64,000 nt of DNA, from the NCBI RefSeq assembly GCF_006345805.1, contig NC_043017.1, positions 13,206,001 through 13,270,000 on the forward strand, read 5' to 3'. This stretch comes from Octopus sinensis (Eukaryota). Below the pieces are notes generated by a model that saw only the letters and a list, made by a program, of their open reading frames with translations, did no database searches and had not been told where the DNA came from. Shown piece after piece: positions 1 to 26,100 of this stretch (the stretch's first letter is position 1; each line of letters starts with the position of its first letter). The translations under genes and the position numbers were made by a program.

Positions 1-658
1 TGCTTAAATTTTATTTCACTGCTTAAGCCATAAATACTAGATTTATAGTCAAATATGCCTCTAGTAGGGACTGGGTTGACATCAGCAATGTGTAACCCGA
101 GATGTTTGAAGAGCAGGCCCACAGAAAGTCTTCCCACTACATATTCTCCCTCGATTGTCAATTCTTTGACTAAGCTGTTCCAAAGAGTTTTAGAATTCTT
201 AAAGCACATTTTTAAAAATATCTTACATAAACATTAAATGCACAAGAAAGATGGCCATCCTGACAGGTTACTCTAAGATCAAGTTCTGTCAACTTAACGT
301 ATCAAGTTATCTACAATTATATAGAGAGTTGTGTGTATATTACTCCCTTGCAACAATACTCCCGCATTGAAAAAAAAAAAGGCAAAACCCTCCCGTCAAG
401 AACGTTGTCAGTAAAGACAGATGCGGAAATGTTTACAATCTTGAAGTCTCAACACTGCACTTGGCCTCGCTTTTCTGACCTCTAACTTCGTCCATTTATC
501 ATTCCACAGCATATCAGCTTCTTTTAATCCAATATTTCTGTCTATTATAAATAATCCCTTCCTCACGTCTCATCCATAGCGATTATTCGCGTTTTACACA
601 TTATATACACATGGTTAGAGTCAGTAATGTGTCAAATAATAACTTTTTATGTATGTGT

Positions 659-702
<44 letters not shown>

Positions 703-1128
703 ACATACATACACACACACGCACATGTGTTTTTACGCGTATGTTTGGGCCATCATAAATCATTGATATAATTAAAGAATTTCTTCGCAATTCTATATTC
801 CTAAACATTAAAAGAATTATGTTGTAAAAATAATAATATAGGAAAATAAACCAAGATACTGATTTCCTAAGCTATATAAATAAATCATTAAACAATTCAT
901 AGAAACATATATCGGTCCCAACCCCATGCAATAAAAGAGACGTAAATTTTGGGTAAAGTACTTCTAATGTCATTAAATACGGTACAATGGAGCCACGAAC
1001 ATTTTAAAATTTTATTTTTGGCATTACTTGTGCTGTAGATACTAAATATATTGTATGAATTATCATTTAATATATAGAAAAAATATTTAAAGTTAAAATA
1101 GTCGTGTTATAATTACCTTGCCTGCCAT
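1..1128 (-). CDS. Candidate 5' end of an unidentified spliced gene running off the left edge: complement(join(1117..1128, <1..197)), MAGK|NSKTLWNSLVKELTIEGEYVVGRLSVGLLFKHLGLHIADVNPVPTRGIFDYKSSIYGLSSEIKFK...
   Basis: ATG GCA GGC AAG|gtaatt donor at 1116; acceptor ctttaag|AAT at 198/197 in the same phase (0); frame open from 197 to the window edge. No homology recognised. Confidence 0.35.
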
Positions 1129-3497: not shown

Positions 3498-4320
3498 CCT
3501 TATATTATTATTATTATTATTAATACGATTATTATTATTATTAGCAACAATTATTAAACTCTATGGATCTATTCAATTTGACGGCCAGATTTTTTAATTA
3601 ATTTTTTTTTGTTAACTACTGTCTTGACCTAAGTAAAACTTGAAATTAAAATAAAACCAGTCGGTTACATCTCATCCTAAGCGGCCGAAAGGTCTTCTTA
3701 GCGCCTAATTTCACAATTAGACTAAATAGTTTAAGTTACACTACTATATTTATTCGTAGCACATTGCGTTCGTACTCAAATAATTGAAGATACGCGATCT
3801 TAGGTTTTATTGAAGTTTAGCCGAAGATACAAATGATACGATAGAGAATTAACAGCTTTACAAGTTAGTGAGTGTATTCTGTCGAAACACATTTTTAATT
3901 CTCTATGTGTAAACATGTAATTTTCGATTAAACATCTATTAATCTCAAAAATATTGAATAATTTTGTTCTCATGAACCTAACAGCAAAACGGGTACCAAC
4001 TTAATAGACAATGCGAAAACACGAATTGGTTATACAGAAACGCCGAAACGAATTTTTGAGAAACCGAAACTATAAGTGAAATCATACAAAATTTTGAGGA
4101 ACGAATCAAACGAGGCAGTTTACATCGCCACCGCTTACTGTATATAATATTTTTATCGTACTATATTATTTTTAGTTGTCGTTAGTTTGCGAAAAAATTA
4201 TTAGTAGAAAAAACTTGGATATCTGTTTTTAAAAATTGATAATTTCTTTCCGGAAGTTATATCATCGGCTTTAAGATTTATTCCGCGAATGTATGTGTAT
4301 GATGTTACAGCTGTGACAGA

Positions 4321-7300
4321 ATGGGCGAGGAGAAAACGCCAAAACAACAACTACTAATGACAACACTGGAAAGTTTGGGTAACCATCTGCATTCGCAGAT
4401 CACGACCAGGTTCCCTCAGTTGACTTATAGTCTGGTTTCTAAAATCACTGGAATTCTGTTGGAATGTGGAGAAAAAGAGGTTTTAGCGATGTTGCAAAAT
4501 GGACCGAAATTACAGATGCGGATATCGCAGGTGCTACGAACCCTTTATACAGATCAACCTTCTCACAGTCAAATCACATCACCACAGTTAGTATTTTACT
4601 CTTAATCTTGTTGAAACATTAATATTATAACAATCAGTAGTTGTTTATGGTATCGTTATTATTATTAGTTGTTGTTGGTTTCTTTCTTTTTTATTTTTTC
4701 CAAATTTACGTTTTGCGTTCAAACCATGTCGAAGTCGACTTAGCATGTCATCCTTTCGGGGCCCGTAAATGAAATACTGTTAGAGTACTGGGATCAATTC
4801 CTCCCCGTTCCCCCCAAACTAAAACTGCTGGCCTTCTATCAAAATTTGAAACCACCAAATGCTTTGTTTTCTGTCCTTTTGGGGTTGATGATACAAGTTC
4901 CATTTAAGCACTGAGATGGATGCAATCGATTACCCTCTTTGCGCAAAATTTCAGGCCTTGTGCCTAAACTAGAAAGAATTATTATTAGTGGGTTTTTTTT
5001 ACTAGTTTAGGGGCGATGGGTTTATTCCGTTCCGAGTTCAAATTCTGTGGAAGTCAAGTCAACCATTTATCACATCGGAGTGTCAATAAAACCAATATTA
5101 GGATCGATAGAATCAACTAGCCACATTCTTTCAAAATTGCTGACCTTGCGCCTAAATGAGAAACCTTTATTAGTGTTGTTTATTCTATAATTATTAGCTG
5201 TTAGGGATTCCTTACTCCTTTTGTTTAAGGGTGACGGATTTGTTATGGTTCGTTATATTCTGAGTTCAAATTTCATCAGAGTCAACTTTCAGTTTAAGTA
5301 CTGGTGGCCGTGTAAATTGTTAACATATGCCTATGTTAGAAATAATTAATTTAAATTAGTTTGTAGTCGACTTTGCTTTTCATCCTTTCTTTTTTCTTGT
5401 TAAAGCAAGTATTGGCCGGACCATATTTTATGTTGCTCGCGACTAAGGACGAGCCAAATAGCCTGAAACGGATTCAGTATCGCGATCCTGTTATCTGCTA
5501 GAGGGTAGTAAGGGTTCGTCCCTCCTGCTAACAATATATTGTATATAAAGGGTGCAGAATGTTGCACCGATAAACAGCTGGCAGAAAATCTGCCTGGGGT
5601 TAAGCTAGTAACATTCAACAGTCACTTTGATGTGGCGACTGGCTTTACTGTTTAATATAGTTACTACTCGATCTCTTCTTGAGATTTTACAACTAGCTAT
5701 TTTGGTTTATATATATATATATGCAGCACGGATTTTTGTCAGTGAACAGGTCGCGGATTTTAGCGACGAAAATATTTTGACAAATTAAACTTAAATGTTG
5801 AAGTGAATCGAACGGCTTTTGTGTGTTTCTTAAATGGCTTACAAACACCTTCCACGCTGCAATTATATATATATATGGAAACGACTCTTAAAGTCACTCA
5901 TCTGGTGGCTGGATCATATATATATATGATATTTCTATAATAGTATGATATGGAAAATTCAACAGCTAACAGCTGTTATCAATAAACAGAAACAATTGCT
6001 GTGATTTGTGATTAAAGCCTGTTCATTCCATCTTGTTTTGATCCTGACGAATCGCCTTTACTGCTAAGTGCTTTATAGGTGCGAAACCAACGGTCACGCT
6101 ATGACTGGCCATAACTTAACAACTTCTTTAAAAAAATATTTTTGTTCTAATGCCTTAGAGTCTGCTTCTTTTTCGGATATATGAACTACGCACAATATAT
6201 ATGTGTGAGTGTGTGTGTTTTATTTGAGATTTGTTTAAGTTCTTCGTGGAGTTCAAGTCGGCCGGTTAACTAAGTTCCAAAACTTTTTAAGACAGTTCTT
6301 GGAATTTGTAAGTATGTAGTTCAGTTAGTGGTGTGCATAGATGTGGGTGTGTTCACTTCTATTTATGTTCTATGGCGAGCTGGCAGAAACGTTAGCACGC
6401 CGGGCGAAATGCTCAGCAGTATTTCGTTGCCGTTACGTTCTGAGTTCAAATTACGCCGAGGTCGCTTAATGTGGGGTGGACCTAAAGATTTAAGGCGGCG
6501 AGCTGGCAGAAACGTTAGCACGTCGGGCGAAATGCGTAGCTGTATTTCGTCTGTCGCTACGTTCCGAGTTCAAATTCCGCCGAGGTCGACTTTGCCTTTC
6601 ATCCTTTCGGGGTCGATAAATTAAGTACCAGTTGCGCACTGGGTTCGATGTAATCGACTTAATCCCTTTGTCTGTCCTTGTTTGTCCCCTCTATGTTTAG
6701 CCCCTCGTGGGTAGTAAAGAAATATATTTATGTTCTATGTGAATCTGTCTCTTTAATACCTAGTTTGTACGTGTGTTTGTACATTACTTTTTATGTATGT
6801 CTTTGTGGAGGCACTCAAACAGATGGGTGTGCATTTATTCATTTAAGGAATCTTAGGTGGAGTCTTTAGAATGTCTTACAATTTTTTTTCTGTGTTGCTA
6901 ATACAGTGGTTCTCAACCATTCTTTGCCTATCGACCCCTTTGATTCCTATTTTTCTCAACTGGACCGCCTTAACCATTTGTTGTATATATATATATATAT
7001 GAAAAAAAACCTACTGTATTTTTGTAATTAAATATTATTAGGAATTGTATAAAATTTTTTAAATAGTTTGTGTATTATAGAAGTAAAAGCAATTTATTGC
7101 ACATAAATTTTAATAAGAAAATCTTATATGAGCCCTCAAGGGCCATATGGATTCTGGTTTGGAATCCCTGTGCTTATAGATTGGATTTGGAGGATGTGTA
7201 TCATTTTCTTTTGTTCTTTAGAAAATCCTAGCAAATCTATATTTTCAAGTATGTATGGATGCATGATGATGATGGCTTCCATTGAAATATGCTATCTTTG

Positions 7301-7847
7301 TTTCAATTAATTTTGGAAACAATGAAAAATTTAATAAAATAACTGTTATTATTTAGCTAATGTAGGGTGGCAAGCTGGCGGAATCGTTAGCACACTGGGA
7401 GAAACACTTAGCAGCATTTTGTTTGTCCTTATGTTCTGAGTTCAAATGCTGCTGGGGTTGACTTTGCCTTTCACCCTTTCAGGATTGATAAAATAAGTGC
7501 CAGTTGAACACTGGGGTCGTTGTAATCAACTATTCCCCTCCCCAAATTTCAGGCCTTGTCCCTATAGTAGAAAGGATTATTAATCTAGTGTAAGGCAGCA
7601 AGCTGGCAGAACCATTAGTATACTGGGGAAAATGCTTTGCGGCATTTCGTATGTCCTTATGTTCTGAGTTCAAATTCTGCCAATAGAAGGAGTGGCTGTG
7701 TGGTAAGTAGCTTGTTTACCAACCACATGGTTCTGGGTTCAGTCCCACTGCGTGGCACCTTGGTCAAGTGCCTTCTACTATAGCCTCGGGCCGACCAAAG
7801 CCTTGTGAGTGGATTTGGTAGACGGAAACTGAAAGAAGCATGTCGTA

Positions 7848-7886
<39 letters not shown>

Positions 7887-10800
7887 GTGTGTGTCCCCCT
7901 AGCATTGCTTGACAACTGATGCTGGTGTGTTTATGTCCCCGTTACTTAGCAGTTCAGCAAAAGAGACCGATAGAATAAGCACTGGGCTTACAAAAGAATA
8001 AGTCCCGGGGTTGAGTTGCTCGATTAAAGGCGGTGCTCCAGCATGGCCACAGTCAAATGACTGAAACAAGTAAAAGAGAGATAGATAGATAGACAGGCAG
8101 ATAGGTAGGTAGGTAGGCAGACAGATAGACAGACAGACAAATAGATAAATAGAGAGAGAGAGATAAGAGCAAGAGGGAGATAGAGAGAACAGGAGAAAGA
8201 ATTGAAATATTGGTGGTGTAGGGGATATTTCAAAGGCATCACTTTCCAAAAGTAAGATTGCTGCTATTTTTCAAATTTGTTATTTTATTCTTTTTCTATA
8301 TTCAGACCCATTGATAACTCTGTTGAATGGACAGATGAAGATTCTGAGAAACTCTTTGATAAAGTAGCTACAATTGAGCCTGTACATTGTGCGAAAATAA
8401 CAGGTTTGTACAAATATTTTGATAACAAACATCAAATCCGTAAAGTGCTTTGTTAAACAAATCAGATGTGTTCGCTGCTTTGGTTTATACATCAAAGCTA
8501 TAGGCTGCACTATAATATACAACAAAGCTATTCAGACTGCCTCATAACGTAGGAGTGGCTGTGTGGTAAGTAGCTTGTTTACCAACCACATGGTTCCGGG
8601 TTCAGTCCCACTGCGTGGCACCTTGGGCAAGTGTCTTCCACTATAGCCTTGGGCCGACCAAAGCCTTGTGAGTGGATTTGGTAGACGGAAACTGAAAGAA
8701 GCCCGTCGTATATATGTATATATATGTGTGTGTATATGTTTGTGTGTCTGTGTTTGTCCCCCCAACATCGCTTGACAACCGATGCTGGTGTGTTTACGTC
8801 ACCGTAACTTAGCGGTTCGGCAAAAGTGACTGATAGAATAAGTACTAGGCTTACAAAGAATAAGTCCTGGGGTCGATTTGCTCGACTAAAGGCGGTGCTC
8901 CAGCATGGCCACAGTCAAATGACTGAAACAAGTAAAAGAGTAAAGAGTAAAAGAATAACATGCAAGGTGCTTTATTACATAAATTAAAACATTGGTTCCT
9001 AATCTTTTACTCCCTGCAATAAGCACTCATGGAAGTACCATGTAAGTGCTCAGGTTGGTTGCACATTAAAAGCACCCAGTACATTCTGTAAAGTGGTTTG
9101 TATTAAAAAGGGCATCCAGCCATAGAAATCAGGCCAAATCAGACTGGAATTGGTGCAGCCTCCCACCTCTGGTCAAACCATCCAATCCATGCCAGCGTGG
9201 AAAATGGACATTAAATGATGATGATGATGGAATTAAAATTTTCTAAAGGTTAATAAAATTAACCAAAATAAATGAGATATATGTTCTACCCTGCACACTG
9301 TAATGTATATATACATATATTCACACACATATATAAACACACACACACACACATATATACATACCTACATAGATTGCTTTTGTCTTTCTAGGAATGCTGT
9401 TAGAAGGAGATAAGAATTTTCTAAGACAATCTCTAATTAATGAAGATCTCTTAAAATCTGCCATCTGTAAAGCTCGACTGACCTACCTTCAGTCAATTGG
9501 TCTTATATCATCTTCTGCTTGTGATACAGAAATAAAAGAAGAAAATTGTTTGGATGACAAAGGAGATGCTATCTACTCACAAGTCACTATGTGGTTTTCT
9601 CCAAAATTAGCTGAAAAAATTACTGGTATGTATCAGTTCAGATAGTTATATATAGTCTTTATTAAATATTAGTTTTGTACATTCAAAAATTATTTGTCAA
9701 CACACACACACACTATTACAGTGTCATATTAATCACATGCACATGCAATACCAACAAATATAAATATACCATCAAACCAAGGTGTAACAGTTCTTGCCTG
9801 ATGATTGCAGTGACATGAAACTTGCTATATAAACATAGTTTTGTTACATTATACATACATACCTATTTCTTTGCTACCCACAAGGGGCTAAACACAGAGA
9901 GGACAAACAAGGACAGACAAACGGATTAAGTCGATTATATCGACCCCAGTCCGTAACTGGTACTTATTTAATCGACACCGAAAGGATGAAAGGTAAAGTC
10001 GACCTCGGCGGAATTTGAACTCAGAGCATAGCGACAGACAAAATACTGCTAAGCTTTTCGCCCGACGTGCTAACGATTCTGCCAGCTTGCCGCCATTATA
10101 CATACATACGCACGCATATATATATAGAAACAACTACAAAGGTATCAAACTGCTAGATCAGGTCATGAAAATTACAGAGAGTTATATCTCAACTAATTAG
10201 GGATATAATTAAACTAGATGAAATGCAGTTTGGTTTTGTTTCTGGGAGAAGTACTACAGATGCCATCTTCATAGTGAGAACAATTGCCAAAAGTAAGCTA
10301 TTGTACTTAGCTTTCATCGACCTGGAGAAAGCTTCTAACAGGGTTCCTCATTTTATTTGATGGTCTCTAAGTAAGCTAAGAGTGGAGGAGTGGCTTGTTG
10401 GAGCAGTTCAAGCCATGTACCACGATGCTGTCAATAAGATGAGAGTTGGCCTTGAATACAGTGATGAATTTAACGTACAAGTTGAAGTACACCAGGGATC
10501 AGTTTTTAGTCCTCTCTTATTCATCATAGTTCTCTAGGCCATAACCATTGAATTCAAAACTGGATGCCCATGGGAACTACTGTATGCTGATGATCTTGCC
10601 CTTATTGCAGAATCTGAAGCAGAATTGGAGAAGTTCTGGGTTTGGAAGCAAAATCTGGAATCAAAGGGCCTTAAAGTTAACTTAGTTAGGACTAAAGTTG
10701 TTAGTGAGAAAGGAGATAAGACTCTCATTCTGGCTGGCAAATGGCCCTGTTCAATATGTAGAAAAGAAGTGGGACATGATTCCATTTGCTGCACCAAGTG

Positions 10801-11373
10801 TAAGCTATGGACACATAAGAGATGCAGTGGAATTGTGGGTAGGTTATCAGATAAGGTTGCTTTTGTGTGTGGCAGATTCACAGGAACACAAAGTGCTAAA
10901 AGCATGAGGGATTTAAACTCTCTTAAATGCCCAGGAGACTCTCTTGAGGAAGTAGATAGTTTCTACTAATTAGGTGACCAAATTAGTAATGGTGGTGGAT
11001 GCTCTGAAAGTAGTTTTTAGAATAAGAATAGGATGTATCTCTCTCTATTAATATGTATTATGTAAAGTGTGACTGGAGAAATCAACCAACCAGCACTTAT
11101 GTCAGTGGAAAGTGGGTTGGCAGTGTTTCGCCCTGAGTTTTGTAGGGAGTGGGATTCAATAATCAGCAATATGACAGTGTTACGATTACTTATTGTTAGT
11201 CTTTCTATATTTCAGGTATGCTGTTGGAGATGCCTTCTGAAGAATTGTCACTGACAGTCAACAATCTCAAAGTATTGAAGAACAGAGCTGAAGAAGCATA
11301 TGTGGCATTGAAAAATAGTGGTCATTTAACGATGTATGAAAGTTCCTTGGAAGATTCAGTTGAATTTGAATAA
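4321..11373 (+). CDS. Triple MLLE (PABC) domain protein, 251 aa; join(4321..4586, 8306..8403, 9392..9625, 11216..11373)
   Basis: Exons join in phase (2,1,1) with GT-AG sites: CCACA|gttagt, ctatattcag|ACCC, ACAG|gtttgt, tttctag|GAATG, ACTG|gtatgt, atttcag|GTATG. The translation has three KITG(I/M)LLE signatures in PABPC/UBR5-like helical context (LGNHLH..SKITGILLE; SEKLFDKV..AKITGMLLE; GDAIYSQV..EKITGMLLE). TAA at 11371-11373. An upstream exon cannot be excluded (acceptor at 4310). Confidence 0.85.
5722..5861 (+). mobile_element. (TA)n-flanked 140-bp repeat carrying a hammerhead-like motif (copy 1); probably a Penelope-like/retrozyme-type remnant
   Basis: Second copy at 59592-59731; both sit between (TA)n runs and have short TGCAGC...GCTGCA termini. 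Confidence 0.7.
5735..5784 (+). ncRNA. Minimal type I hammerhead ribozyme motif, G3:C8 core variant (copy 1)
   Basis: Stem I tttgtca/tgacaaa; core GUGAACA(G); stem II gtcgc/gcgac; GAAA; palindromic stem III AAUAUU; NUH = UUU. Confidence 0.6.
6375..6723 (+). mobile_element. SINE family 2 with duplicated head
   Basis: Two heads (about 6375 and 6495), then one body. Confidence 0.8.
6904..7170. mobile_element. hAT-type MITE
   Basis: CAGTGGTTCTCAACC...GGTTTGGAATCCCTG termini; 8-bp TSD TGCTAATA/TGCTTATA. Confidence 0.7.
7688..8077 (+). mobile_element. tRNA-derived SINE family 1 (octopus OR/OK-like)
   Basis: Head ggagtggctgtgtggtaag..ggttcagtccc (A/B boxes), internal (TA)/(TG) tract, tail gactgaaacaagtaaaag. 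Confidence 0.85.
8549..8953 (+). mobile_element. tRNA-derived SINE family 1
   Basis: Full-length copy. Confidence 0.88.
9862..10093 (-). mobile_element. SINE family 2
   Basis: Full-length reverse copy. Confidence 0.85.
10131..11025 (+). mobile_element. RTE-clade LINE reverse transcriptase fragment (decayed), in intron 3 of the MLLE gene
   Basis: NYKGIKLLDQVMK, QFGF..STTDAIF, AFIDLEKA, HQGSVFSPLLF, LLYADDL and a CSIC..CTKC..THKRC insertion, with stops and frameshifts. Confidence 0.9.
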
Positions 11374-11515
11374 TAATAATCTTTTCTGCTAGAGGCACAA
11401 GGCTTGAAACTTAGGGAGGGGAGTAGTTGATAACATCAACCCCAGTACGTCACTGGTACTTATTTTACCAACTCCAAAAGAATGAAAGCCAAAGTTGGCC
11501 TCAGTGGTAATAGTA

Positions 11516-11977
11516 TTAAAAAATTCTTCAAGGCAGTGTTCCAGTAAGGCCACCGTCTTATGGTTGAAACAAGTAGAAGATAAAAGACTATCACTTATAA
11601 CTTTATCTGCTTTGAGATTCAGTTCCTCCCAAAAATGTATTATTATTAGAACACATTGTAAAACAGAGGTTCTCAAACAAGGGATAAATTTCACATACCC
11701 AGGGGAAATAAGCTTGAATAAGAGGGGGCTGAGGACTGATCCTTGGTGAACCCCTACTTCTACCCAGAATTCTTCACTATACTTGTTGCCGACCCTCACC
11801 TTACTGACAGCATCCCTGTACATGACTTGTACAGTTCTTACGAACCACTCATCTATCCCCGGTTTCCACACTGACCACCAGCTTGGACAGTTTAACAGGA
11901 TCTGGTAAGTCAGAAAACTGCATCAGATTCTGCTGTCTGCATTGGCATGGTTTCTAAAGCTGGATGCCTTTCCTAAT
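11516..11977 (+). repeat. Direct duplication unit, copy 1 (about 460 bp composite)
   Basis: About 11 differences against 16592-17052. Confidence 0.9.
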
Positions 11978-12475: not shown

Positions 12476-12642
12476 CAGGAGTGGCTGTGTGGTATGTAGC
12501 TTGCTAACCAACCACATGGTTCCGGGTTCAGTCCCACTGCGGGCCATCTTGGGCAAGTGTCTTCTGCTATAGCCCCGGGCCGACCAATGCCTTGTGATTG
12601 GATTTGGTAGACAGAAACTGAAAGAAGCCTGTCGTATATATG

Positions 12643-12876: not shown

Positions 12877-13368
12877 GGTTGAAGTTGTAATTTAATGAAT
12901 CTCAGCAGTTCCTTTAATATCTCTTATTTTTTTACAGCTGCTAAATCAAATAACAGCTCTAAGCATTTAGAATTATTGTAAAGATTCATTATTTATGAGA
13001 AATAATGGCTCATTTGTCCTCCAAAAACCTCATTGATCTAGATATTGTTTTTTTTTTCAAGAAATCTCAAAACATCGAACATTTGTAAAATGAACAGAAA
13101 TATTACAATTGGTATGGAACTGCCAGCAAGAGTGAATTGATGTATAAATAGTAAAAGATCACTAGCTTTTGGAGTTCACAAACTTCTAGTAGGTTAATGG
13201 AATCCACAGACATGAAATGAATAAGTTTATATACAATGAATATATTTGTGAATTTTATTGACTGGACTTTGCAGCCACATACCACCCACAAGTTTCCTTG
13301 AGATCTACGATTTATTTATTTTAAAATTTGAATTGTCTTCCTAATGAATGGTAATTCCTTCTCAGACA

Positions 13369-15139: not shown

Positions 15140-15360
15140 TTATACTTTGTCATAGAAGAAGAAACTGATGCTGGCTGTCGCTGCAACAATAGCTGCAACT
15201 ACTGCACCTGAAATACAAGGTAAAAAAATGAAATGTATTATCATTTTCATAAGAATTTAGAAATTTTGAGGACATGAAATCATTCTTCTTTCAAAATGGT
15301 GAATCTCAAAGCAAATAAAGATATAGATTAACAATCAACAAGTCGTATATATGTATATAT

Positions 15361-15418
<58 letters not shown>

Positions 15419-18095
15419 CTTGTGTGTCTGTGTTTGTCCCCCCAGCATTGCTTGACAACCAATGCTGGTGTGTTTATGTCCCCGTCACTTAGCGGTTCGG
15501 CAAAAAGAGACCGATAGAATAAGTACTGGGCTTACAAAGAATAAGTCCCGGGGGTCGAGTTGCTCGACTAAAGGCGGTGCTCCAGCATGGCCGCAGTCAA
15601 ATGACTGAAACAAGTAAAGAAAGAAAAAGAGCAATGTCGTTCTGGATTCCCTGCACATTAGTAAAAAGCGGGACGGTCATGGCTGGAATGCATTTGATCA
15701 TATGTCTGCTTGATCAAGTCTGAGCCGAGGCTGAATAACAATGTGTTTGGGGGTCGTTAGGGCACTGCAGTCATGCAACATATTTTGGGTGAGAAAGCCT
15801 AGCTGAACCCATCCCTCTCCAGGCTAAACTCTACAGCTGAGTGGACTGGAGCAACATGAAATGATGTGTTTTGCTCAAAAACACAACACACAGCCCGGTC
15901 CAGGGATCAAAATCTCAATCTTATAGTCATGAATTCAACACCCTAACCACAAAGATATAAATAATAGCACATATATATTGGGTTAAAAATCCCTTTAGGA
16001 TAGAAAATTCAAAGGCTACCCATGGGACTTAAATGTCTTCTGTAAACATGACAGATTATTTATTACCCACAAGGGGCTAAACACAGAGGGGACAAACAAG
16101 GACAGACATAGGTATTAAGTCGATTACATCGACCCCAGTGCGTAACTGGTACTTAATTTATCGACCCCGAAAGGATGAAAGGCAAAGTCGACCTCGGCGG
16201 AATTTGAACTAAGAGCGTAATGGCAGACGAAATACGGCTACGCATTTCGCCCGGCGTGCTAACTTTTCTGCCAGCTCGCCGCCAAAAATATGACAGATGT
16301 ACCATTGGACCAAACTAATCCTTTAGATTTCTTTATCCATTTTAGATACTTTGTTCTTATCAGTGAGAATTGAATACACTTCTTACAGGTGTAGGCATGG
16401 CTATGTGGTAAGAAGCTTGCTTCCCAACTACATGGTTCTAGGTTCAGTCCTACTGCATCGCACCTCAGGCAAGTGTCATCTACTAAAGACTTGGTTTTAA
16501 TCAAAGCCTTGGGAACAGATTTGGTAGATGGAAATTGAAAGAAGTCACTTGTATATACATGTGTGTCAAGTACTGAGGTCAATTCATTCAGTTAAAAATT
16601 CTTCAAGGCAGTGTTCCAGTAAGGCCACCGTCTTATGGTTGAAACAAGTAGAAGATAAAAGACTATCCCTTATAGCTTTATCTGCTTTGAGATTCAGTTC
16701 CTCCAAAAAATGTATTATTATTAGAACACATTGTAAAACAGAGGTTCTCAAACAAGGGATAAATTTCACATACCCAGAGGAAATAAGCTTGAATAAGAGG
16801 GGGCTGAGGACTGATCCTTGGTGAACCCCTACTTCTACCCAGAATTCTTCACTATACTTGTTGCCGACCCTCACCTTACTGACAGCATCCCTGTACATGA
16901 CTTGTACAGTTCTTACCAACCTCTCATCTATCCCCAGTTTCCACATTGACCACCAGCTTGGACAGTTTAACAGAATCTGGTAAGTCAGAAAACTGCATCA
17001 GACTCTGCTGTCTGCATTGGCATGGTTTCTAAAGCTGGATGCCTTTCCTAATGCCAACCACTTTACAGAGTATAAATGTGAGCAATAGCAACATTTTATA
17101 TTTTTTCTAAATTTAACATTTTTCTGGGGGTAAATTTAACATTTCATGTCAAATACACCAGTAGTTTTTTTTTTTTGCTACAAAATCAAAAAGATTAAAA
17201 TTCTCTGTGTTAATCAGAGGATAATCTTGAATCCCTTTTTTTAAGCATACATACACCAGATCTCTTCATGTCATAAGAGGTGACTAAAAGGGTTGATGTC
17301 ACAAAGGACATGGCCATAAAAAAAATTGCCTCAAAATATACCCCCTAATCTATACTCTCATGGAAAAACAGATGATACAAGTAAATTACAGACCCAGAAT
17401 TAAAACAGATAGAACAAAGCAAACTAAAACAAAAGCATAAAAAGTAGTAATATATATATATATATACATATAGGGGAGAATTCAAAAGAACAAAGAACGA
17501 AGACAAGTGGTGTAGACAACAAACAGATGTATTAGTATAACGCTCAGGAATAGAAAAAGTCTTTTACGTTTCGAGCCTATGCTCTTCTACAGAAAGGGAC
17601 ACAGAAAAAACAAGGAGAGAGAAAAAAAAAATATACATAATAAAACTATAATATACTTACTCATATAGTATTTTGCAGTCGATGTCTTTGATAAATATAT
17701 CGGCACATTAGAGGTTGATTGGAAGGCACTGCTTTTTTGCCGTTTCTCAATATCATCATCAACTGAAAAATGGAAAGAAATTTCATGAAGAATTTACAAA
17801 ATATTTTTATAAAATAATACATATTTTTTAATCAATCACATATTTTTAATATTTAGTAAAAACATTAATGTGTGCCAGCATGAATATTGTTTGGTAAAAA
17901 ACTTCCCTTTCCCCAATGACATGTGTTCAAATTTGATCCAAATGCTGGGCACCCTGGGAGGATTGAAATGATAGGGTGTAGCATGGCTGATTGGACATTC
18001 AGCCTGTTTTGGTGACAGTATTTTTTGACACTAGAGGCATACACACACACACTCCTGTGCAAAGAAATATACACATACAGATAGAAAGAGTGAGT

Positions 18096-18126
<31 letters not shown>

Positions 18127-21100
18127 CAGGTTTATTAACTGGACATGATTGGCAAACACTTTCCCTATCCTCGTATGCATAAAGAGAAATATGCACGCAC
18201 ACATGAACAGAGAGAGACAGAAAGATAACAAGAGAAACATTAAAACATCTGTCATATAAGCCAGCATCAAATTAGTGGCACCAAATAAGTGACGCCAAAA
18301 AGGCTGTGCCCAAATGTCTCAATCCCCCCACCTTGGAATAGTATCTCTTCTACCATAGATTGGGGTCAACCAAAGCCTTGTGAGTAAAATTTGAAAGTGG
18401 CAGGCAGAAACTGTATGGAAGCCTAAAGGAAGGAGCGACTTTGTTTTGGGGGTCAACTGGTTCCACACCAACATTTGGGTCATGTCTACCCAGCTGTTTT
18501 AGAAAGCCTAAGAAGATAATCTGAGCACTGATCTTCCTCCTTTGATTTAACCATAGACACTCCAAGATTTAACTCCAAGACACTGAGTGTTAGACAAAAT
18601 GAAGTCCTTAGCAAGGTAATTCAGATCAAAATGTTCCAACCTTGATCATCCTGTTCTATATTCTAACATTTCTAGCATTATATTTTCCAATGTATCCTAT
18701 TTCTTAAGGCAGTAAATGGTGATGTGAGGGAAAATTAGCTACTATTTTTAGAAAGTAGAACAACCAAAGAAGCCTCATCATTGGCTTGAAATATACTGTT
18801 AGTTATTAGAAGAAATTACCAACGTTAGAATCAACAGAATAATAGAGTACTTTGTATTGGCATAGCTGAAGTGGATAACCAAGTCTGAGACTTACCAGGA
18901 ATTCTTTCACAGTTAAACTGTAGACATGGTTCTGTTAATGTGACATCAAGTAATTCTTGGAATCGGTTTATGGTTTCTTCAATTTCTTCATCTTGAAACA
19001 TGTAGTCACAAAACTGAAATGGTCTGTCAGGAAGTGTTCCAAAGACTCGCACTGGGGTATCAAACACAGTTTTTGTAGCTTTAAAGGAAAACAAACAAAA
19101 AAGAAATAAAAAATAAAATTTAACAAAAACATACAAAAAAGGATCTGGTACATGTAACTGAGTCAGTATTTAATTAAAATAGCCACCTGTGTCATACATA
19201 ATGGATATACATAGTCTGATAGGCCAGTTACTGTTGTATTTGTCCTAAGATACTCACAGCTAATAACATGCTTTGATGAGTGCTGGCTGCTGCTGGGATG
19301 AATTTTTCTCTCTCTCTCTCTCTCTTTGAAATTGTGTATTTTAACATAGCAAGTCCAAAAGAGATGTTATCTCGGGACAAATACTGCAGTGACAAGCCTA
19401 TCAAAGTGTATATACATTTGGCTATAAGAAAAAAAGAATTAATAAAAATAACTAAAACTGTAAAAGATTAACTTCTTAGTTAACAAACCGACCATATCAG
19501 GCCCAAATATTCTATCTGTTCAAAGTGACCAGATCACGCTTCTCACACCTGCCCTACAATGTCATTCTAAAAATAAACAACCACACCATAGAAATCTCAA
19601 ATCTACAAGATAATGTATGATAAATTCAAATCAAAGTGAATAAATGAGCATTACATTTGACTTCTAAAAGTTAAAAGATTTTACTGAATGAAAGGAACAC
19701 ATTTCTAAATAAGAGAAGTAAATGGTGCTATGCACATATCATTTTGGCAATGGTTCTTTAATGTTCTGAGTTCAAATCCTGCTGAGGTCAACTTTGTCTT
19801 TCATCCTTCTGGGTTCAATAAAATAAAGTACTAGTCATGTGCTAGGGTCAATTTAATCAACTTACACCTCCCACCCCTCTAACCAATATTTTAACCCTTT
19901 AGCATTTAAACCGGCCATATCCGGCCAAAAAGTATTCTGCCTGTTTTATGTTCAAAATGGCCAGATCTGGTCTCTCACACCAACCCTACAATATCATTTA
20001 AAAAATTAACGGTTACCTCATCAAATTCTCATAGCTACAAGATAATGCATGATTAGTTCAAAACAATGTGGATGAAGAAGCATTAATTTGGGTAGAATAA
20101 TGCAAACACTAAAGGGTTAAGCCATGTTATTGACAGAAACAATTATTGATGACGCAACAGAATTGGTTGAGAGACGAATTTTTTTTTGGTTTCAAGTTAG
20201 GACAGAAGGCAATATGTGTGCGTAGGGGAGACATGTGTATGTGTGTTTGGGAATATAAGTATTTATAAAATGACATACCAGCATCTTCCTCAATAACATC
20301 GATGTCTTCACACAACAGCTCACAGCGTGATACCAAGCTACGGATGATGTCACATTTAACAACCTGGACAAAATAAAATACTATGTTACATGCAACACAC
20401 ATATACATATATATACATACATAGATATACACACATGCAAACATACATACATATATATATAAAGGATAAAATAATAATAAAACTAATAATAATTCTGCTC
20501 AATACCACAGATTTGCTTGTCAGTTGTTTGACCATAACCAGTTGAGCATGTCCCTTAGTGGCTGACAATGTGTGCATCTCTGATCACGAGCAGAAGTAGT
20601 GGGGGAGCATCATAGCCATATGTTGAGAGGGATTCCTTGGGGTTTGAATAATTCACCTCTGAAAACATGGGGTGTTTCATTCAACACCTTTAAACAACCC
20701 TTATTCAGGGACCTTTTGAGCGGGATGGGTTACTCGACCAGAAGAAAATTCTAACTGGGCCCCACCTGCAAGGTCATGTGCTCTTTATCTTGATATGAGA
20801 TCACCATGTCGCGCACATATGGTTGTGATGTATGTGCCTAATTTTAGAAATGGTCACAGAGAATTGTCAGCAACACTTGCTAAACCAAGCATCCCAACAC
20901 ACAGGTGGGGTGAGGTGGGTTATTTCTCAATTAAGGCAGTATGAAAGATAATTTCATACCTCCCTGTTACGGCTGATTGATTGAAGTTAAAGTTACACTC
21001 GACAGAAATTTTCAGATCTATTTTTTTCAGTCATTGGACTGTGGCCTTGTGGGACCACCACCTTGAAGGGTTTAGTCAAACAAATCAACCTCAGTACTTC

Positions 21101-21199
21101 TTGTTTTTGAAGTCTGGTACTTCTATTGGTCTCTTCTGCTGAACTGCTTTGTTACAGGGATGCCAACAAACCATCACTGGTTGTCAAGAAGTAACCAAA

Positions 21200-21234
<35 letters not shown>

Positions 21235-21799
21235 CAGGCTTCCAGTTTCCATCAACCAAATTCGCTCACAGTGCATTGGTTGGCCTGGGATAACAGTAGA
21301 AGACACTTGCACAAGGTACCACACATTGGGACTGAAACCAAAACCACAAGGTTTCAAAGCAAGCGTTTTAACCACGCAGCCATGCCTATGCCAATATGAG
21401 AGGGGAAAAAATTAAGAATGGATCGTAATTTACAATTCTTTTCCTTTCTTACCTGTATGCCTTCTTGGACAGTGGCTTTGGGATTAACATAGGCACAAAT
21501 TGTCATGACCCCTCGAATCCATAAACTGGAAGAACATTCGGCTATGGCAACGGCTGATTGATTGTCCTCCTGGGGGAGAAGAAAAAAATGGTAAGGTGAG
21601 AATGATTGAGAGAAAATTCAGAAAGATCCATTTGTACAAGCATACATGAACCAAATATAGTCTTCCAAATATAGTAGTGAAATCTCCCTCAAACCATAGT
21701 CTGAGAAGAAGCAGGACACTTTGAATGAAGCAGTCCTAGATATACATAGTTTGTTTCAAGCTGAACTGGATTAAACAACAACAGAAAAAAATAAACACT

Positions 21800-21847
<48 letters not shown>

Positions 21848-23039
21848 AAGAAACTTACATGTGGTAACAACAAATTCACTTTATAAATTTTCAGATTCAA
21901 ACTTTTGTTTTGGAGTTGAATTTTTTGATTTTCACATGATGGTTTACTGGAAAGTTGTTCCTCTGAGTTCCTTAACTGACTTCCTATGGTAACCATTCCA
22001 TTCCAAACACTGTCACAAAATGGTTGGATTCCAGTCTGGAAGACATTTCAAGACAAAATACTATAAGATAAAACAGAGTACATTAAATGAGGATAATATG
22101 TTTTGGTGAAAACAGCAAAAATTGTTAATTTTATCCTGTACTTGTTTCAAACATTGGACTGTGGACATACTGGAGTACTGCCTAGAAGGGTTTAGTCAAA
22201 ATAAATTGAGCCCAATACTTACATATATGTGTGTGTGTGTGTATATCATCATCATCATCATCGTTTAACGTCCGTTCTCCATGCTAGCATGGGTTGGACG
22301 GTTCGACTGGGGATCTGGGAAGCCAGAAGGCTGCACCAGGCTCCGGTCTTATCTGGCAATGTTTCTACAGCTGGATGCCCTTCCTAATGCCAACCACTCC
22401 GAGAGTGTAGTGGGTGCTTTTTACGTGCCACCTGCACTGGTGCCAGCGAGGCTGGCATCGGCCATGGTCGGATTGGTGCATTTTACGTGCCACCTGCACG
22501 GAAGCCAGTCAAGGCTGCACTGGCTTCGGCCACGATTCGGATGGTGCTTTTTACGTGCTACCGTATATGTATATATAAATAAGGAAAACATCGTTAATTT
22601 AAATATCAATCTTATCAAGTGGCCAGCATGGGAATAAAAACCTTCAAAGGTAATAATTATTATTAAAATTATAATTAGATACCCTAAATTATAATTTTAA
22701 TAATAATGATATATATATATACATGTATTTCTTTTATTCTTTTACTTGTTTCAGTTATTTGACTGAGGCCATGCTAGAGCACCACCTTGAAGGGTTTTAG
22801 TTGAACAAATCAACCTCAGGACTTATATTTAAAGCCCAGCACTTATTCTATTTGTCTCTTTTGACAAACCACTAAGTTACAGGGATGTAAACACACTAAC
22901 ACCGGTTGTCAGGTGGTGATGGGTGACAAACACAGACATAAAACACACACAACGGGATTCTTTTAGTTTCTCACTACCAAATCCACTCACAAGGTTTTGA
23001 TCAGCCCAAGGCCATAGAAGAACACACATTTGCACAAGG

Positions 23040-23102
<63 letters not shown>

Positions 23103-26100
23103 CACACACACACATAATATATATAAACTTACTTGGAAATGGATGCAGTCTTGTACTTATTCTATTGGTTTCTTTTTGCTGAAATGCTAAGTTATAGGGA
23201 TGTAAACAAACTAGTACCAGTTGTCAAGTTGTAAGGGAGACAAGCACAAGCACACACACACACATATGTACATGATGTGAAGGTGCATGGCACAGTGGCT
23301 ATAGCATTGGGCTCCCAGTTGTAAGATTGCGAGTTCGATTCCTGGACAGAGGTGTGTGCTGTGTTTTTGAGCAACACACATTACTTCACACTGTTCCAGT
23401 TCACTCAGCTGTAGAAACGATTAGTGACATCACCAGTGCCAAGCTATATCAGCTTATGTCATTCCCTTAGACAACAGCAGTAGCATGGAGAGGGGAGACT
23501 GATATGCATGGGCAACTGCTAGTCTTCCACAAACAACCTTATCTGGACTTACGCCTCAGAGGGGAACTTTCAAGGTACAATCCCATGGTCTTTACTCTTT
23601 TACTCTTATATACATAATAGGTTTCCACATAGTTTCTTTGTACCAAATTCACTCACAAGGTATTGGTCAGCCATAACCTTTTTAAAGCGGCAAGCTGGAA
23701 GAAACGTTAGTAGGCTGGGTGAAATGCTTAGCGGTATTTCGTCTGCCGTTACGTTCTGAGTTCAAATTCTCACCGAGGTCGACTTTGCCTTTCATCCTTT
23801 CGGGGTCGATTAAATAAGTACCAGTTACGCACTGGGGTCGATATAATCGACTTAATCCATTTGTCTGTCCTTGTTTGTCCTCTCTATGTTTAGCCCCTTG
23901 TGGGTAGTAAAGAAATAGGTATTGGTCGGCTTAGAGCTAAATAATATCCTGTGTAGAAGACACTTACCCAAAGTGGAACTGAACCCCAAACCACAAGATT
24001 GCAAAGCAAGTTTCTTAACCACACAGTCCATATCTAGTAAGGTGAGAATAAACAACCACAAAGGTGCATATTTGATAACATAGTCAAAGCTAGAATCAGG
24101 AGGAAATAACTGGTCATAACTAGGATGTTTTTCACCAATCATAGATTTTTTCTAAGAGGGTTAGTAGGGGACTAAAAATAAGAAAAAAGATAAAGCAGTC
24201 CAAGGTACACCCTGGGGTGGTGGGGAACAAAGTGGTCAGTTATAGCTAGAATGTGTCAAAACCCATTATATAATTTTATATTTTTTACTGGTTTCAGTCA
24301 ATGGCATGTAGTCATGCTGGGGCACTGCCTTTAAAAGATTTTAGTTGACTGTATCAGTTGTATTCAGTCTGGTATATATTTGATAGTGGATTTGATTATA
24401 GCCCCATAGCTATGACCAAATCCACTATCAAATATATACTAGACTTGCCAGTGCCGCCTTGACTAGCTTCCGTGCCGGTGGCACGTAAAAAGCACCATCC
24501 GACTGTAGCCGTTTGCCAGACTTGTCTGGCACCTGTGCAGGTGGCACGTAAAAAGCACCCACTACACTCATGGAGTGGTTGGCGTTAGGAAGGGCATCCA
24601 GCCGTAGAAACATTGCCAGATCAGACTGGGCCTGGTGCAGCCTTCTGGCTTCCCAGACCCCAGTTGCACCATCCAACCCATGCCAGCATGGAAAGCGGAC
24701 GCTAAACGATGATGATGATGATGATGATGATGAATACAACCAATACAGTCAACTATAATAAAAATAATAATGAATAACTTACCAAAATTTTCTTAATAAA
24801 GTTACTACTCTTCATCTGTTTCGTTATAATAATTGGTAAATCTATAGCTACAGTAGTTTCTAATTTATTCCAATTGTCTGTGATTTGTTGGCATTTCCAG
24901 TCTGCTGGTTGAAGAGAACTCTTAAAGAATAAAAAGTTTAAATATTTCAGAGAAAGCCATTTTGTTACCATAAATCTATTGAAATAAATTGCTTTTGTTT
25001 TAATTAATTTTGAAAAAAAATGAAGAATGTAGTGAAATAAGTTCCTCATAATTAAGCTGGTGTTTAGAATACAAATTAGATGGAAATTTTTTAATTAGAT
25101 AACTTTAAGATATTTATTACCATATTTTTGCTACAAATAAGAAGGTATGTTTTTTTTTTCTCATCCTTTTTTTGACAATCATTGGAAAGGGATAAATATA
25201 GTGATACTTACTTTGAGATTTAAGATGTCTAAAGTACGACATGTGTATCTGATAGGTTGAATAAAGGAAAAAATACTTGAATTTACTCAGAATTCATAAC
25301 GAGTCATTTAAGGTCTTTGATACAAAATCATTTGAGGACTCAATCTTCCTCTAGATCTTATTCAAAACTCAATCTCAATGATTTTCAAATGAGATCATAT
25401 AGTGTGTGTGTGAGTGTGTGTGCATGTATACATACACACACACACACACAAAATCATCATCATCATTGTTCGACCGTGGTCGAGACAATGGAATTTACCA
25501 TGCTACGCCAGACTTCACGGTCCATCATGGTATTACGGAGGTCCTGTTGCTGGATGCCTGTATCCCTGGAGATTACATCAGGGTAGGAGAGCGTGCGCCC
25601 TCAGGTACTGTGAGTAGATGGCTTCCAGAGGAGAAGAGTAGAAATTACTTCTTTTTCAGCTCTACAACAATGTCCAGCAAACTGGACTCTCCTACCTTTC
25701 ACAAGAGATGACACAGGTGGTAGTTTCCCATATATTTGCATTTTGGTTGGATGGCGCTTCCACAGAGATTTTGAGCTCTCATAAGGAGGCGAGTGTAGGT
25801 TCCATCCAACCGCCTCTCAAGCTTCTACAAAATAGATGAATAGAGAAAGAAATGTGGTACTAAAATAATGTGAAAGGATACTTTTTGGTCACTGAGCACA
25901 TCTGGAAAATGACACGTTCGTTGATGGAAAAGTCTTTGGTAAAAATTAACTGAGCCTTTATTAGAAGTTTCTGGATTGCAAATAACATCTGAAGAGAGAA
26001 TTGAAAAAAAGCAAAAACAGGAAAATATATTATTGTGTAATATTTAATGATAATTATAACAATTTACATGGAGGCACGTGGCTTAGTGGTTAGGGTGTCA

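What the first reader, a model, noticed from the sequence alone, without database searches (positions are those of the whole stretch)
4321..11373. Stand-alone protein built of three tandem MLLE (PABC) domains, with no RRM or HECT
Seen: four in-phase exons give a 251-aa protein with three KITG(I/M)LLE modules separated by short acidic or Ser-rich linkers and nothing else. Established: in animals MLLE is known essentially as a single domain in cytoplasmic PABPs and UBR5/EDD, where it binds PAM2 peptides (eRF3, PAIP1/2, PAN3, TOB, ataxin-2, LARP4, GW182). A tandem tri-MLLE platform is known from fungal Rrm4 (endosomal mRNA transport), but there it is attached to RRMs. Inference: this may be a multivalent PAM2 adaptor or decoy controlling translation, deadenylation or mRNA transport. 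Module 1 (GILLE, NH in place of ER) is the most divergent, which suggests different specificities. The short-ORF view shows only fragments, so the architecture is easy to miss.
Basis: partly seen in the sequence, partly recalled or inferred. Interest (0 to 1): 0.85.

Follow-up and report, generated by a model that had tools for sequence, protein, structure and literature searches.

The report
Stand-alone triple MLLE-domain gene in octopus
This is a real, selectively constrained octopus gene for a small protein made only of three MLLE (PABP C-terminal) peptide-binding domains, and it belongs to an old animal family, found here in corals, molluscs and fishes but not in tetrapods, that no paper I could search describes.

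Summary
Four GT-AG exons (4321-4586, 8306-8403, 9392-9625, 11216-11373, + strand) encode a 251-aa protein. It is identical to the annotated but uncharacterised Octopus sinensis LOC115222983 isoform X1.

- **Domains.** Each of the three modules passes Pfam's MLLE cut-off on its own. AlphaFold gives three helical bundles on disordered linkers, and these superpose on solved MLLE structures.
- **Nothing else attached.** There is no RRM, HECT or other domain. The upstream neighbour is an ankyrin gene on the opposite strand.
- **Selection.** dN/dS against O. bimaculoides is 0.11.
- **Family.** No tetrapod was found. Members share phase-1 introns inside the Gly codon of KIT|GMLLE. In scallop, teleost and shark the gene lies head-to-head with RPL28.
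- **Predicted binding.** Module 3 keeps the canonical PAM2 pocket. Module 2 has Ser at the Phe-pocket glycine. Module 1 has lost Glu564 and Phe567.

The most likely function is an RNA-independent, multivalent binder of PAM2-type motifs that competes with or bridges PABP partners. That function is inferred, not shown. I found no literature on the family.

The parts
4321..4586 (+). Coding exon 1, from the ATG to a phase-2 donor. It encodes residues 1-88 and the first two bases of codon 89, which covers all of MLLE module 1 (helices at aa 7-77, nt 4339-4551; KITGILLE at aa 41-48). Unlike fish module 1, it has no internal intron.
4300..4302 (+). In-frame TGA six codons upstream of the start codon. 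A possible splice acceptor (ttacag) sits at 4305-4310, so a 5' UTR exon further upstream is possible.
8306..8403 (+). Coding exon 2. It holds the end of linker 1 and the N-terminal half of MLLE module 2 (module from nt 8334), and ends KIT|G with a phase-1 donor inside the Gly codon.
9392..9625 (+). Coding exon 3 (234 nt). It holds the C-terminal half of module 2 (to nt 9495), the Ser-rich/acidic linker 2, and the N-terminal half of module 3 (from nt 9550), again ending KIT|G in phase 1. Its counterparts are the 240-nt exon of scallop and the 237-nt exon between modules 3 and 4 of catshark.
11216..11373 (+). Coding exon 4. It holds the C-terminal half of module 3 (to nt 11316), a short tail and the TAA stop.
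9530..9625 (+). Alternative 3' splice site inside exon 3, used by the annotated isoform X2 (205 aa, XP_036367717.1). It removes 46 residues, which is the C-terminal half of module 2.
   Evidence: mapped exactly; transcript support not seen
13062..13140 (+). Alternative last coding exon of the 264-aa O. vulgaris model (CAI9738398.1). It is reached from an alternative donor after 11333 and changes only the C-terminal tail.
1..1128 (-). 5' part of the upstream neighbour, an ankyrin-repeat gene on the opposite strand, head-to-head with the MLLE gene. It rules out upstream RRM exons within about 3.2 kb.
   Evidence: the same neighbour is present in Argonauta
15140..29878 (-). Downstream neighbour, an ODR4-like gene on the minus strand. 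Exon fragments with Pfam hits lie at 18831-19136 and 29591-29878.
   Evidence: the same neighbour is present in O. bimaculoides and Argonauta

Best explanation
The locus is a functional protein-coding gene (O. sinensis LOC115222983). Its whole product is three MLLE/PABC four-helix bundles joined by two disordered acidic or Ser-rich linkers. It is the octopus orthologue of an old metazoan family of stand-alone 3-4 x MLLE proteins. Because it has no RNA-binding or catalytic domain, it most likely acts purely through peptide binding, as an RNA-independent multivalent receptor for PAM2-type linear motifs. Module 3 should bind canonical PAM2 peptides such as those of Paip1/2, eRF3, ataxin-2, Tob, PAN3, GW182 and LARP4. 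Modules 1 and 2 have altered pockets and probably bind variant motifs or act as accessory domains, as in the hierarchy described for fungal Rrm4. In the cell it would either draw PAM2 proteins away from poly(A)-bound PABPC (a competitor) or bridge several of them (a scaffold). Either way it would tune translation, deadenylation or mRNP assembly. What is shown: the gene structure, domain identity, fold, purifying selection, family membership and orthology. What is inferred: PAM2 binding and every downstream effect.
For: - **Gene model and domains.** The model is exact and matches RefSeq. It contains three independent MLLE matches above the Pfam cut-off.
- **Fold.** The AF2 model has three helical bundles with block pLDDT of about 80-91 and linkers below 50. 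The top 27 Foldseek PDB matches are all MLLE structures (PABPC1, PABPC3, UBR5, Leishmania PABP1, U. maydis Pab1), with probability 0.98-1.0, target TM-score 0.61-0.91 and rmsd 0.8-4.6 A; Rrm4 MLLE2 follows at rank 34.
- **Selection.** dN/dS is 0.11 against O. bimaculoides at dS 0.13. Against Argonauta, dN is 0.14 in the modules and 0.56 in the linkers.
- **Conserved gene structure.** Octopus, Argonauta and scallop share the same 4-exon structure and intron phases. Teleost and catshark have the same phase-1 intron in the Gly codon of xxT|GMLLE.
- **Synteny.** Ank / MLLE gene / ODR4-like is conserved in octopods.
- **Pockets.** PAM2-contact residues were taken from PMC2854688 and mapped. Module 3 keeps G563, K580, T582, M584, L585, L586, E587, E609, A610 and L614, with the conservative changes E564D, F567Y and K606R. 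Module 2 has G563S, the same change the Rrm4 authors (PMC9249222) argue blocks the PAM2 Phe. Module 1 has E564N, F567H, M584I, A610V and a 4-residue loop insertion.
Against: - No binding, expression or localisation data exist for any family member. No paper was found.
- Foldseek E-values are weak (0.13 and above) because the domains are short.
- Two of the three modules deviate at positions that matter for PAM2, so the true ligands may not be classical PAM2 motifs.
- I did not see spliced octopus reads.
- A competitor role cannot be told apart from a scaffold role by sequence.
Confidence: 0.55

Rival explanations
1. The exons are the 3' end of a divergent PABPC-like or UBR5-like gene whose RRM or HECT exons lie further upstream and were missed.
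For: A possible splice acceptor lies at 4305-4310, and the ten bases between it and the ATG contain no stop in the coding frame. 5' ends of predicted models are often incomplete.
Against: - The upstream neighbour is an ankyrin gene on the opposite strand in both octopus and Argonauta.
- Orthologues in scallop, cuttlefish, corals and fishes all begin within about 5-45 residues of module 1 and have no other Pfam domain.
- In scallop, teleost and shark the upstream gene is RPL28 on the opposite strand.
- Transcript-sized contigs of about 1 kb carry complete 240-300-aa ORFs.
- A TGA lies six codons upstream in the genomic frame.
Confidence: 0.03
2. It is a decaying duplicate or a chance ORF, for example exon-shuffled MLLE fragments of PABPC with no function.
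For: The modules are only about 30% identical to PABPC1 MLLE, and modules 1 and 2 have lost some PAM2-contact residues.
Against: - dN/dS is 0.11, and nearly all replacements fall outside the helix cores.
- The ORF is intact in O. sinensis, O. vulgaris, O. bimaculoides, Argonauta, cuttlefish and scallop, with identical intron positions.
- The family is conserved from cnidarians to fishes.
Confidence: 0.02
3. It is a real tri-MLLE protein, but its ligands are not classical PABP partners. It would recognise PAM2-like or unrelated motifs in a dedicated pathway, for example tethering mRNPs or regulators to membranes or organelles as Rrm4 does through Upa1, and would not act mainly as a PABPC competitor.
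For: - Modules 1 and 2 deviate at the Phe pocket (G563S; E564N and F567H), as do the accessory MLLEs of Rrm4, which do not bind PAM2.
- Module-specific signatures are conserved across phyla, which argues for distinct, maintained specificities.
- Every homologue from a named cnidarian that starts MG carries an N-myristoylation consensus except one fragment-like model (P0094, MGRK). This hints at a membrane-anchored ancestral state.
Against: - Octopus MGEE does not fit the myristoylation consensus, and bivalve and fish proteins do not start with MG.
- Module 3, and most fish modules, keep a canonical PAM2 pocket.
Confidence: 0.3

Closest known systems
MLLE (PABC) domain of cytoplasmic poly(A)-binding proteins (PABPC1/3/4)
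   Same: Same Pfam family, the same KITGMLLE signature and the same helical-bundle fold. Module 3 keeps nearly all PAM2-contact residues.
   Different: PABPC has four RRMs and a single MLLE, and is tethered to poly(A). This protein has three MLLEs and nothing else, so it cannot be recruited to mRNA through RNA binding of its own.
Ustilago maydis Rrm4 (three RRMs plus a three-MLLE platform), PMC9249222
   Same: Three MLLE domains arranged as flexible beads on a string. One is canonical and two are divergent, including the same Gly-to-Ser change at the Phe-pocket glycine.
   Different: Rrm4 is fungal, carries RRMs and binds the PAM2-like motifs of Upa1 on endosomes. There is no sign of common descent of the triple arrangement. 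The octopus modules are canonical enough for Pfam, whereas Rrm4 MLLE1 and MLLE2 needed structure modelling to be recognised.
Arabidopsis MPC (MATERNALLY EXPRESSED PAB C-TERMINAL)
   Same: A natural protein consisting essentially of the PABP C-terminal domain without RRMs. It is hypothesised to regulate translation (PMC4307191).
   Different: It is a plant gene with a single MLLE, imprinted in endosperm, and of independent origin.
UBR5/EDD MLLE
   Same: An MLLE fold that binds PAM2. The structural match to 3ntw has target TM-score 0.84-0.91 and rmsd 0.8-1.0 A.
   Different: In UBR5 a single MLLE is embedded in a 2,800-aa HECT E3 ligase. Nothing of that kind is present here.
Uncharacterised metazoan 'PABC domain-containing proteins' (e.g. 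Latimeria LOC102356072, Callorhinchus V9KYV4, Pecten LOC117316855, Exaiptasia LOC110253855)
   Same: This is the family the octopus gene belongs to: 200-340 aa, only 3-4 MLLE modules, and shared intron positions and phases.
   Different: Sharks, coelacanth, bichir and sturgeon have four modules. Teleosts have the first three of these. Mollusc modules 2 and 3 correspond to vertebrate modules 3 and 4. Octopods have lost the RPL28 linkage, and their module 1 is unusually divergent.

Membership tests
MLLE / PABC domain (Pfam PF00658) | A significant profile match above the curated cut-off | tested here: met
   The whole protein scores 105.4 bits with 3 stretches. The modules alone score 34.9, 38.2 and 42.5 bits against a cut-off of 27.
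MLLE / PABC domain (Pfam PF00658) | A right-handed bundle of 4-5 helices | tested here: met
   The AF2 model has three bundles of four helices. The top 27 Foldseek hits are all MLLE structures, with probability 0.98-1.0 and target TM-score up to 0.91.
MLLE / PABC domain (Pfam PF00658) | The KITGMLLE signature in helix 3 | tested here: met
   KITGILLE, KITGMLLE, KITGMLLE.
MLLE / PABC domain (Pfam PF00658) | Conserved PAM2-contact residues (G563, E564, F567, K580, T582, M584, L586, E587, K606, E609, A610, L614 of PABPC1) | tested here: inconclusive
   Module 3 meets this, with the conservative changes D, Y and R. Module 2 has G563S, K606A, E609K and L614Y. Module 1 has E564N, F567H, M584I and A610V.
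MLLE / PABC domain (Pfam PF00658) | Binds PAM2 peptides | not testable with these tools
   This needs ITC, fluorescence polarisation or pull-down.
Cytoplasmic poly(A)-binding protein (PABPC) | Four N-terminal RRMs followed by a linker and one MLLE | tested here: not met
   Pfam finds no RRM in the product. The upstream neighbour is an ankyrin gene on the opposite strand. Orthologues also lack RRMs. The database name 'polyadenylate-binding B-like' is a similarity label only.
UBR5 / EDD | HECT, UBR-box and UBA domains around one MLLE | tested here: not met
   The 251-aa protein has no such domains.
Rrm4-type mRNA transporter | RRMs plus a C-terminal triple MLLE platform | tested here: not met
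   The triple MLLE is present but there are no RRMs.
Metazoan stand-alone multi-MLLE family (unnamed) | A protein made of 3-4 colinear MLLE modules only | tested here: met
   Alignment A1 is colinear across molluscs, octocorals and fishes.
Metazoan stand-alone multi-MLLE family (unnamed) | A phase-1 intron in the Gly codon of xxT|GMLLE and phase-2 linker introns | tested here: met
   Octopus, Argonauta and Pecten have phases 2,1,1. Mastacembelus has 1,2,1,2,1. Scyliorhinus has 1,2,1,2,1,1. The octocoral gene has lost these introns.
Metazoan stand-alone multi-MLLE family (unnamed) | Head-to-head linkage with RPL28 | tested here: not met
   The linkage is present in Pecten, Mastacembelus and Scyliorhinus. 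It is absent from the octopus window and from octopod loci, where an ankyrin gene takes that place. I treat this as a lineage-specific rearrangement, not as grounds for exclusion.

The most novel reading that the evidence does not exclude
The stand-alone multi-MLLE proteins are an ancient, still unstudied arm of the PABP-PAM2 network. On this reading they form a dedicated multivalent hub, ancestrally membrane-anchored by N-myristoylation as the cnidarian MGN... termini suggest, and linked to the ribosomal protein gene RPL28 in bilaterians. The hub would sequester or cluster PAM2 and PAM2-like proteins and so set global translation or deadenylation, or tether mRNPs to membranes. That would be an animal counterpart of the fungal Rrm4/Upa1 platform, lost in tetrapods.
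Probability: 0.2. Interest if true: 0.8.

Novelty: new variant of a known kind. Interest (0 to 1): 0.6.

Why it matters
MLLE-PAM2 contacts organise translation initiation, termination, deadenylation, miRNA silencing and stress-granule factors around PABP. The literature treats MLLE in animals as a single domain found in PABPC and UBR5, and in 2022 Rrm4 was called the first protein with multiple MLLE domains.

A conserved animal family consisting only of 3-4 MLLE domains would be a natural competitor or scaffold for all PAM2 proteins. It has probably been overlooked because I found no member in mammals or other tetrapods, nor among named arthropod or nematode proteins.

The family is present in tractable species such as medaka, stickleback, fugu, carp and sea anemones, so its role can be tested directly. 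Its loss in tetrapods also raises the question of what replaced it.

For the octopus genome itself the finding is a correct annotation, not a discovery. The gene was already predicted.

Tried and rejected
- **Upstream RRM exons.** Rejected because the neighbouring genes are on the opposite strand and orthologues share the same N-terminus.
- **RPL28 in the octopus window.** tblastx with three RPL28 loci gave only two hits: one adjoining the reverse-transcriptase ORF near 60.5 kb and a weak one at 39.2 kb, both from shark intron sequence. No RPL28 was found.
- **An intramolecular PAM2-like motif in the C-terminal tail (SSLEDSVEFE).** The Leu-Phe spacing is one residue short of PAM2, and the tail is not conserved in O. 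bimaculoides or Argonauta. Rejected.
- **N-myristoylation of the octopus protein.** MGEE does not fit the consensus, unlike the cnidarian homologues.
- **Literature.** Seven searches for any description of tandem or stand-alone MLLE proteins in animals, or for the gene identifiers, found only Rrm4 papers and the plant gene MPC.
- **Failed look-ups.** The Latimeria, Polypterus and Exaiptasia loci were not on record.
- **Irrelevant call.** A bacterial promoter/terminator scan has no bearing on a eukaryotic gene.
- **Long multi-MLLE hits from the 1.84-billion-protein search.** These show other architectures, including 6-7 x MLLE, F-box, RING, RRM and a probable GPCR fusion artefact. I did not follow them up.
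Full report
**1. The observation**

They are 4321-4586, 8306-8403, 9392-9625 and 11216-11373 on the + strand. The 251-aa product contains KITGILLE, KITGMLLE and KITGMLLE.

Pfam's MLLE model (PF00658) matches at E=1.6e-30 in three stretches. Each third of the protein, scanned alone, exceeds the curated cut-off of 27 bits, with 34.9, 38.2 and 42.5 bits. The only other Pfam match is the related PABC_AtC3H46 model, which overlies module 2. PDB sequence searches return only MLLE domains of PABPs and UBR5.

**2. Identity of the locus**

The window is Octopus sinensis chromosome CM016879.1; locus L001 matches window 1-21373 at 100%. The translation is identical to XP_029649267.1, 'uncharacterized protein LOC115222983 isoform X1', and to O. 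vulgaris CAI9738399.1, 'polyadenylate-binding B-like'. So the gene is annotated but uncharacterised.

Two further annotated isoforms map exactly onto the window:
- A 205-aa form uses an internal acceptor at 9530 and loses the C-terminal half of module 2.
- A 264-aa O. vulgaris form uses a donor after 11333 and an extra exon at 13062-13140.

**3. No hidden domains**

- The upstream neighbour is an ankyrin-repeat gene on the minus strand. Its 5' end is at about window 1128.
- The downstream neighbour is an ODR4-like gene on the minus strand.
- The same order is found in Argonauta hians, and the ODR4-like side in O. bimaculoides.
- A TGA lies in frame six codons before the ATG.
- Homologues in other animals start within about 5-45 residues of module 1 and carry no other domain.

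**4. Structure**

AlphaFold2 was run with a 36-sequence family alignment. It gives three bundles of four helices at aa 7-77, 99-156 and 175-233, with block pLDDT of about 80-91. Linkers 78-93 and 161-173 are below 50, and pTM is 0.31, as expected for independent beads on a string.

The top 27 Foldseek matches in the PDB are all MLLE structures, from PABPC1, PABPC3, UBR5/EDD, Leishmania PABP1 and U. maydis Pab1. Probability is 0.98-1.0, target TM-score 0.61-0.91 and rmsd 0.8-4.6 A. Rrm4 MLLE2 appears at rank 34. The E-values are weak (0.13 and above) because the domain is short.

**5. Selection**

The exact CDS was recovered from O. bimaculoides and Argonauta. Nei-Gojobori estimates are as follows:

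| Comparison | dN | dS | dN/dS |
|---|---|---|---|
| O. sinensis vs O. bimaculoides | 0.015 | 0.13 | 0.11 |
| vs Argonauta, modules | 0.14 | saturated | - |
| vs Argonauta, linkers | 0.56 | about 1.3 (near saturation) | about 0.43 |

**6. The family**

A protein search found 102 relatives at E<=1e-3, all made of MLLE modules only apart from one 381-aa Logan ORF (P0049) that also carries a precomputed PF08221 annotation. Named hits are:
- cephalopods (Octopus, Argonauta, Acanthosepion);
- scallops (Pecten, Mizuhopecten);
- anthozoans (Exaiptasia, Actinia, Dendronephthya, Xenia, Paramuricea);
- cartilaginous fishes, Polypterus, sturgeon and paddlefish, coelacanth, lungfish and many teleosts.

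Motif counts give four modules in sharks, chimaera, coelacanth, bichir, sturgeon and hexacorals, and three in teleosts, molluscs and octocorals.

A second search used the coelacanth protein and returned 418 proteins at E<=1e-8. The best 120 are all fishes, including fugu, stickleback, medaka, carp and gar. Lungfish ranks second at 58% identity, and no tetrapod appears. A tetrapod orthologue would have been expected near the top, so the family appears to have been lost in tetrapods.

A profile search of 1.84 billion representatives found 75 clusters at E<=1e-30 and 688 at E<=1e-10. These include other multi-MLLE architectures: 6 and 7 MLLE modules, MLLE with F-box, with RING and with RRM.

**7. 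Orthology**

Exact exon maps are as follows:

| Species | Coding exons | Intron phases |
|---|---|---|
| Octopus, Argonauta, Pecten | 4 | 2, 1, 1 |
| Mastacembelus (teleost) | 6 | 1, 2, 1, 2, 1 |
| Scyliorhinus (catshark) | 7 | 1, 2, 1, 2, 1, 1 |

In the molluscs, both phase-1 introns sit inside the Gly codon of KIT|GMLLE in modules 2 and 3. In the teleost the same phase-1 intron occurs in all three modules, with phase-2 introns in the linkers. In the catshark there is no linker intron between modules 3 and 4. The exon spanning them is 237 nt, against 234 nt in octopus and 240 nt in scallop for the exon spanning mollusc modules 2 and 3.

A module tree groups vertebrate M1-M4 by position and groups the mollusc M1s together. 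It places cephalopod and bivalve M2 with vertebrate M3, which share the signature [IL][ED]P..CA.ITGMLLE. So mollusc M2 and M3 correspond to vertebrate M3 and M4, and the tandem arrangement predates the bilaterian radiation. These are 65-residue modules and a neighbour-joining tree, so the module assignments are suggestive and not firm.

The gene lies head-to-head with RPL28 in scallop, teleost and catshark, at CDS-to-CDS distances of 6.0, 2.8 and 1.8 kb. This microsynteny is very unlikely to arise by chance. It is not kept in octopods.

**8. Likely mechanism**

PAM2 contacts in PABPC1 were taken from PMC2854688: Q560, G563, E564, F567, G579, K580, T582, M584-I588, K606, E609, A610, V613, L614 and H617. 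Mapped on the modules:

- **Module 3** keeps G563, K580, T582, M584, L585, L586, E587, E609, A610 and L614. Its changes are conservative (E564D, F567Y, K606R, I588M, V613A).
- **Module 2** has Ser at G563, the glycine that makes room for the invariant PAM2 Phe. Devan et al. argue that the same Gly-to-Ser change in Rrm4 MLLE1 hinders Phe binding. Module 2 also has K606A, E609K and L614Y.
- **Module 1** keeps G563 but has E564N, F567H, M584I, I588C and A610V, plus a four-residue insertion between helices.

I therefore predict one canonical PAM2 site (module 3) and two variant or accessory sites on a flexible string. With no RNA-binding domain, the protein can only act by binding peptides. It would either compete with PABPC's MLLE for PAM2 proteins or bridge several of them. 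This is inference; nothing has been measured.

**9. Comparison with known systems**

- It is not a PABPC (no RRMs), not UBR5, and not an Rrm4 orthologue.
- It works most like the Rrm4 MLLE platform, with three MLLEs in a hierarchy of canonical and divergent pockets.
- It also resembles Arabidopsis MPC, an RRM-less PABP C-terminal domain protein thought to regulate translation.
- Devan et al. (2022) state that Rrm4 is, to their knowledge, the first protein with multiple MLLE domains.
- Seven literature searches found nothing on animal multi-MLLE proteins or on this gene.

**10. Verdict**

This is a real gene, correctly read by the first stage. It is a member of an old, widespread and unstudied animal family. 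The domain is known, the stand-alone tandem architecture in animals is undescribed in the literature, and the function is inferred. Interest is moderate to high for the PABP/PAM2 field. As a genome annotation it is ordinary.

Noticed in passing
L003 1-3993, L005 3270-5231, L007 4613-8213 (all minus strand, upstream of the MLLE gene): The ribosomal protein gene RPL28 (Pfam Ribosomal_L28e) is the head-to-head upstream neighbour of the multi-MLLE gene in scallop, a teleost and a catshark. This gene pair has been kept across bilaterians but is broken in octopods.
   Followed up: partly
N-termini of homologues from named cnidarians (P0029, P0036, P0045, P0073, P0076) and of unnamed octocoral-like contigs (P0051, P0067, P0089-P0093, P0096-P0099): Every one of these homologues that starts MG, apart from one fragment-like model (P0094, MGRK), fits the N-myristoylation consensus G-{EDRKHPFYW}-x(2)-[STAGCN]-{P}, for example MGNEASS and MGNSEGS. 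This suggests membrane anchoring in Cnidaria. The cephalopod start MGEE/MGDE does not fit.
   Followed up: partly
P0107, P0108, P0122, P0239, P0129, P0125: Other multi-MLLE architectures exist in public data. Examples are a 593-aa protein with six evenly spaced MLLEs, a 1573-aa protein with seven, 4 x MLLE with F-box and beta-propeller, RING with 2 x MLLE, and MIF4G with RRMs and 3 x MLLE. A GPCR-MLLE product is probably a fused gene model.
   Followed up: partly
window 11389-11871 (-) and 16584-16946 (-); 11519-11977 vs 16594-17052: Two copies, 97.8% identical, of a retroelement fragment with ORFs that resemble reverse transcriptase (no Pfam match). One copy begins about 16-146 bp after the MLLE gene's stop codon. 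The other lies inside the ODR4-like gene.
   Followed up: no
window 12476-12876, 35991-36406, 37290-37686, 43022-43403, 50228-50609, 52480-52865 and others: There are many copies, 90-97% identical, of interspersed repeats of about 380-420 bp (SINE-like) on both strands. They also occur in the introns of the MLLE gene, for example around 8548-8960.
   Followed up: no
window 59704-60549 (+): A 281-aa ORF with a reverse-transcriptase domain (RVT_1, E=4.5e-22). It is probably a LINE fragment.
   Followed up: partly
window 10625-10969 (+), inside intron 3 of the MLLE gene: A 114-aa ORF with a PHD-finger-like match (E=1.8e-5), overlapped by an antisense 123-aa ORF. It is probably a remnant of a transposable element.
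   Followed up: no
window 48739-49743 (-): The longest ORF in the window (334 aa) has no Pfam match. I cannot say whether it is an exon, a transposable element or chance.
   Followed up: partly
window 9330-9352 and 9704-9716: (CA)n / (TATA)n microsatellites lie directly upstream of the exon 3 acceptor and about 80 bp downstream of its donor.
   Followed up: no
window 3000-4500: CpG observed/expected rises to 1.2-2.0 in the roughly 1.3 kb upstream of and across the start codon. Elsewhere in the first 6 kb it is mostly 0.5-1.2. This is consistent with an unmethylated promoter region between the ankyrin gene and the MLLE gene.
   Followed up: no
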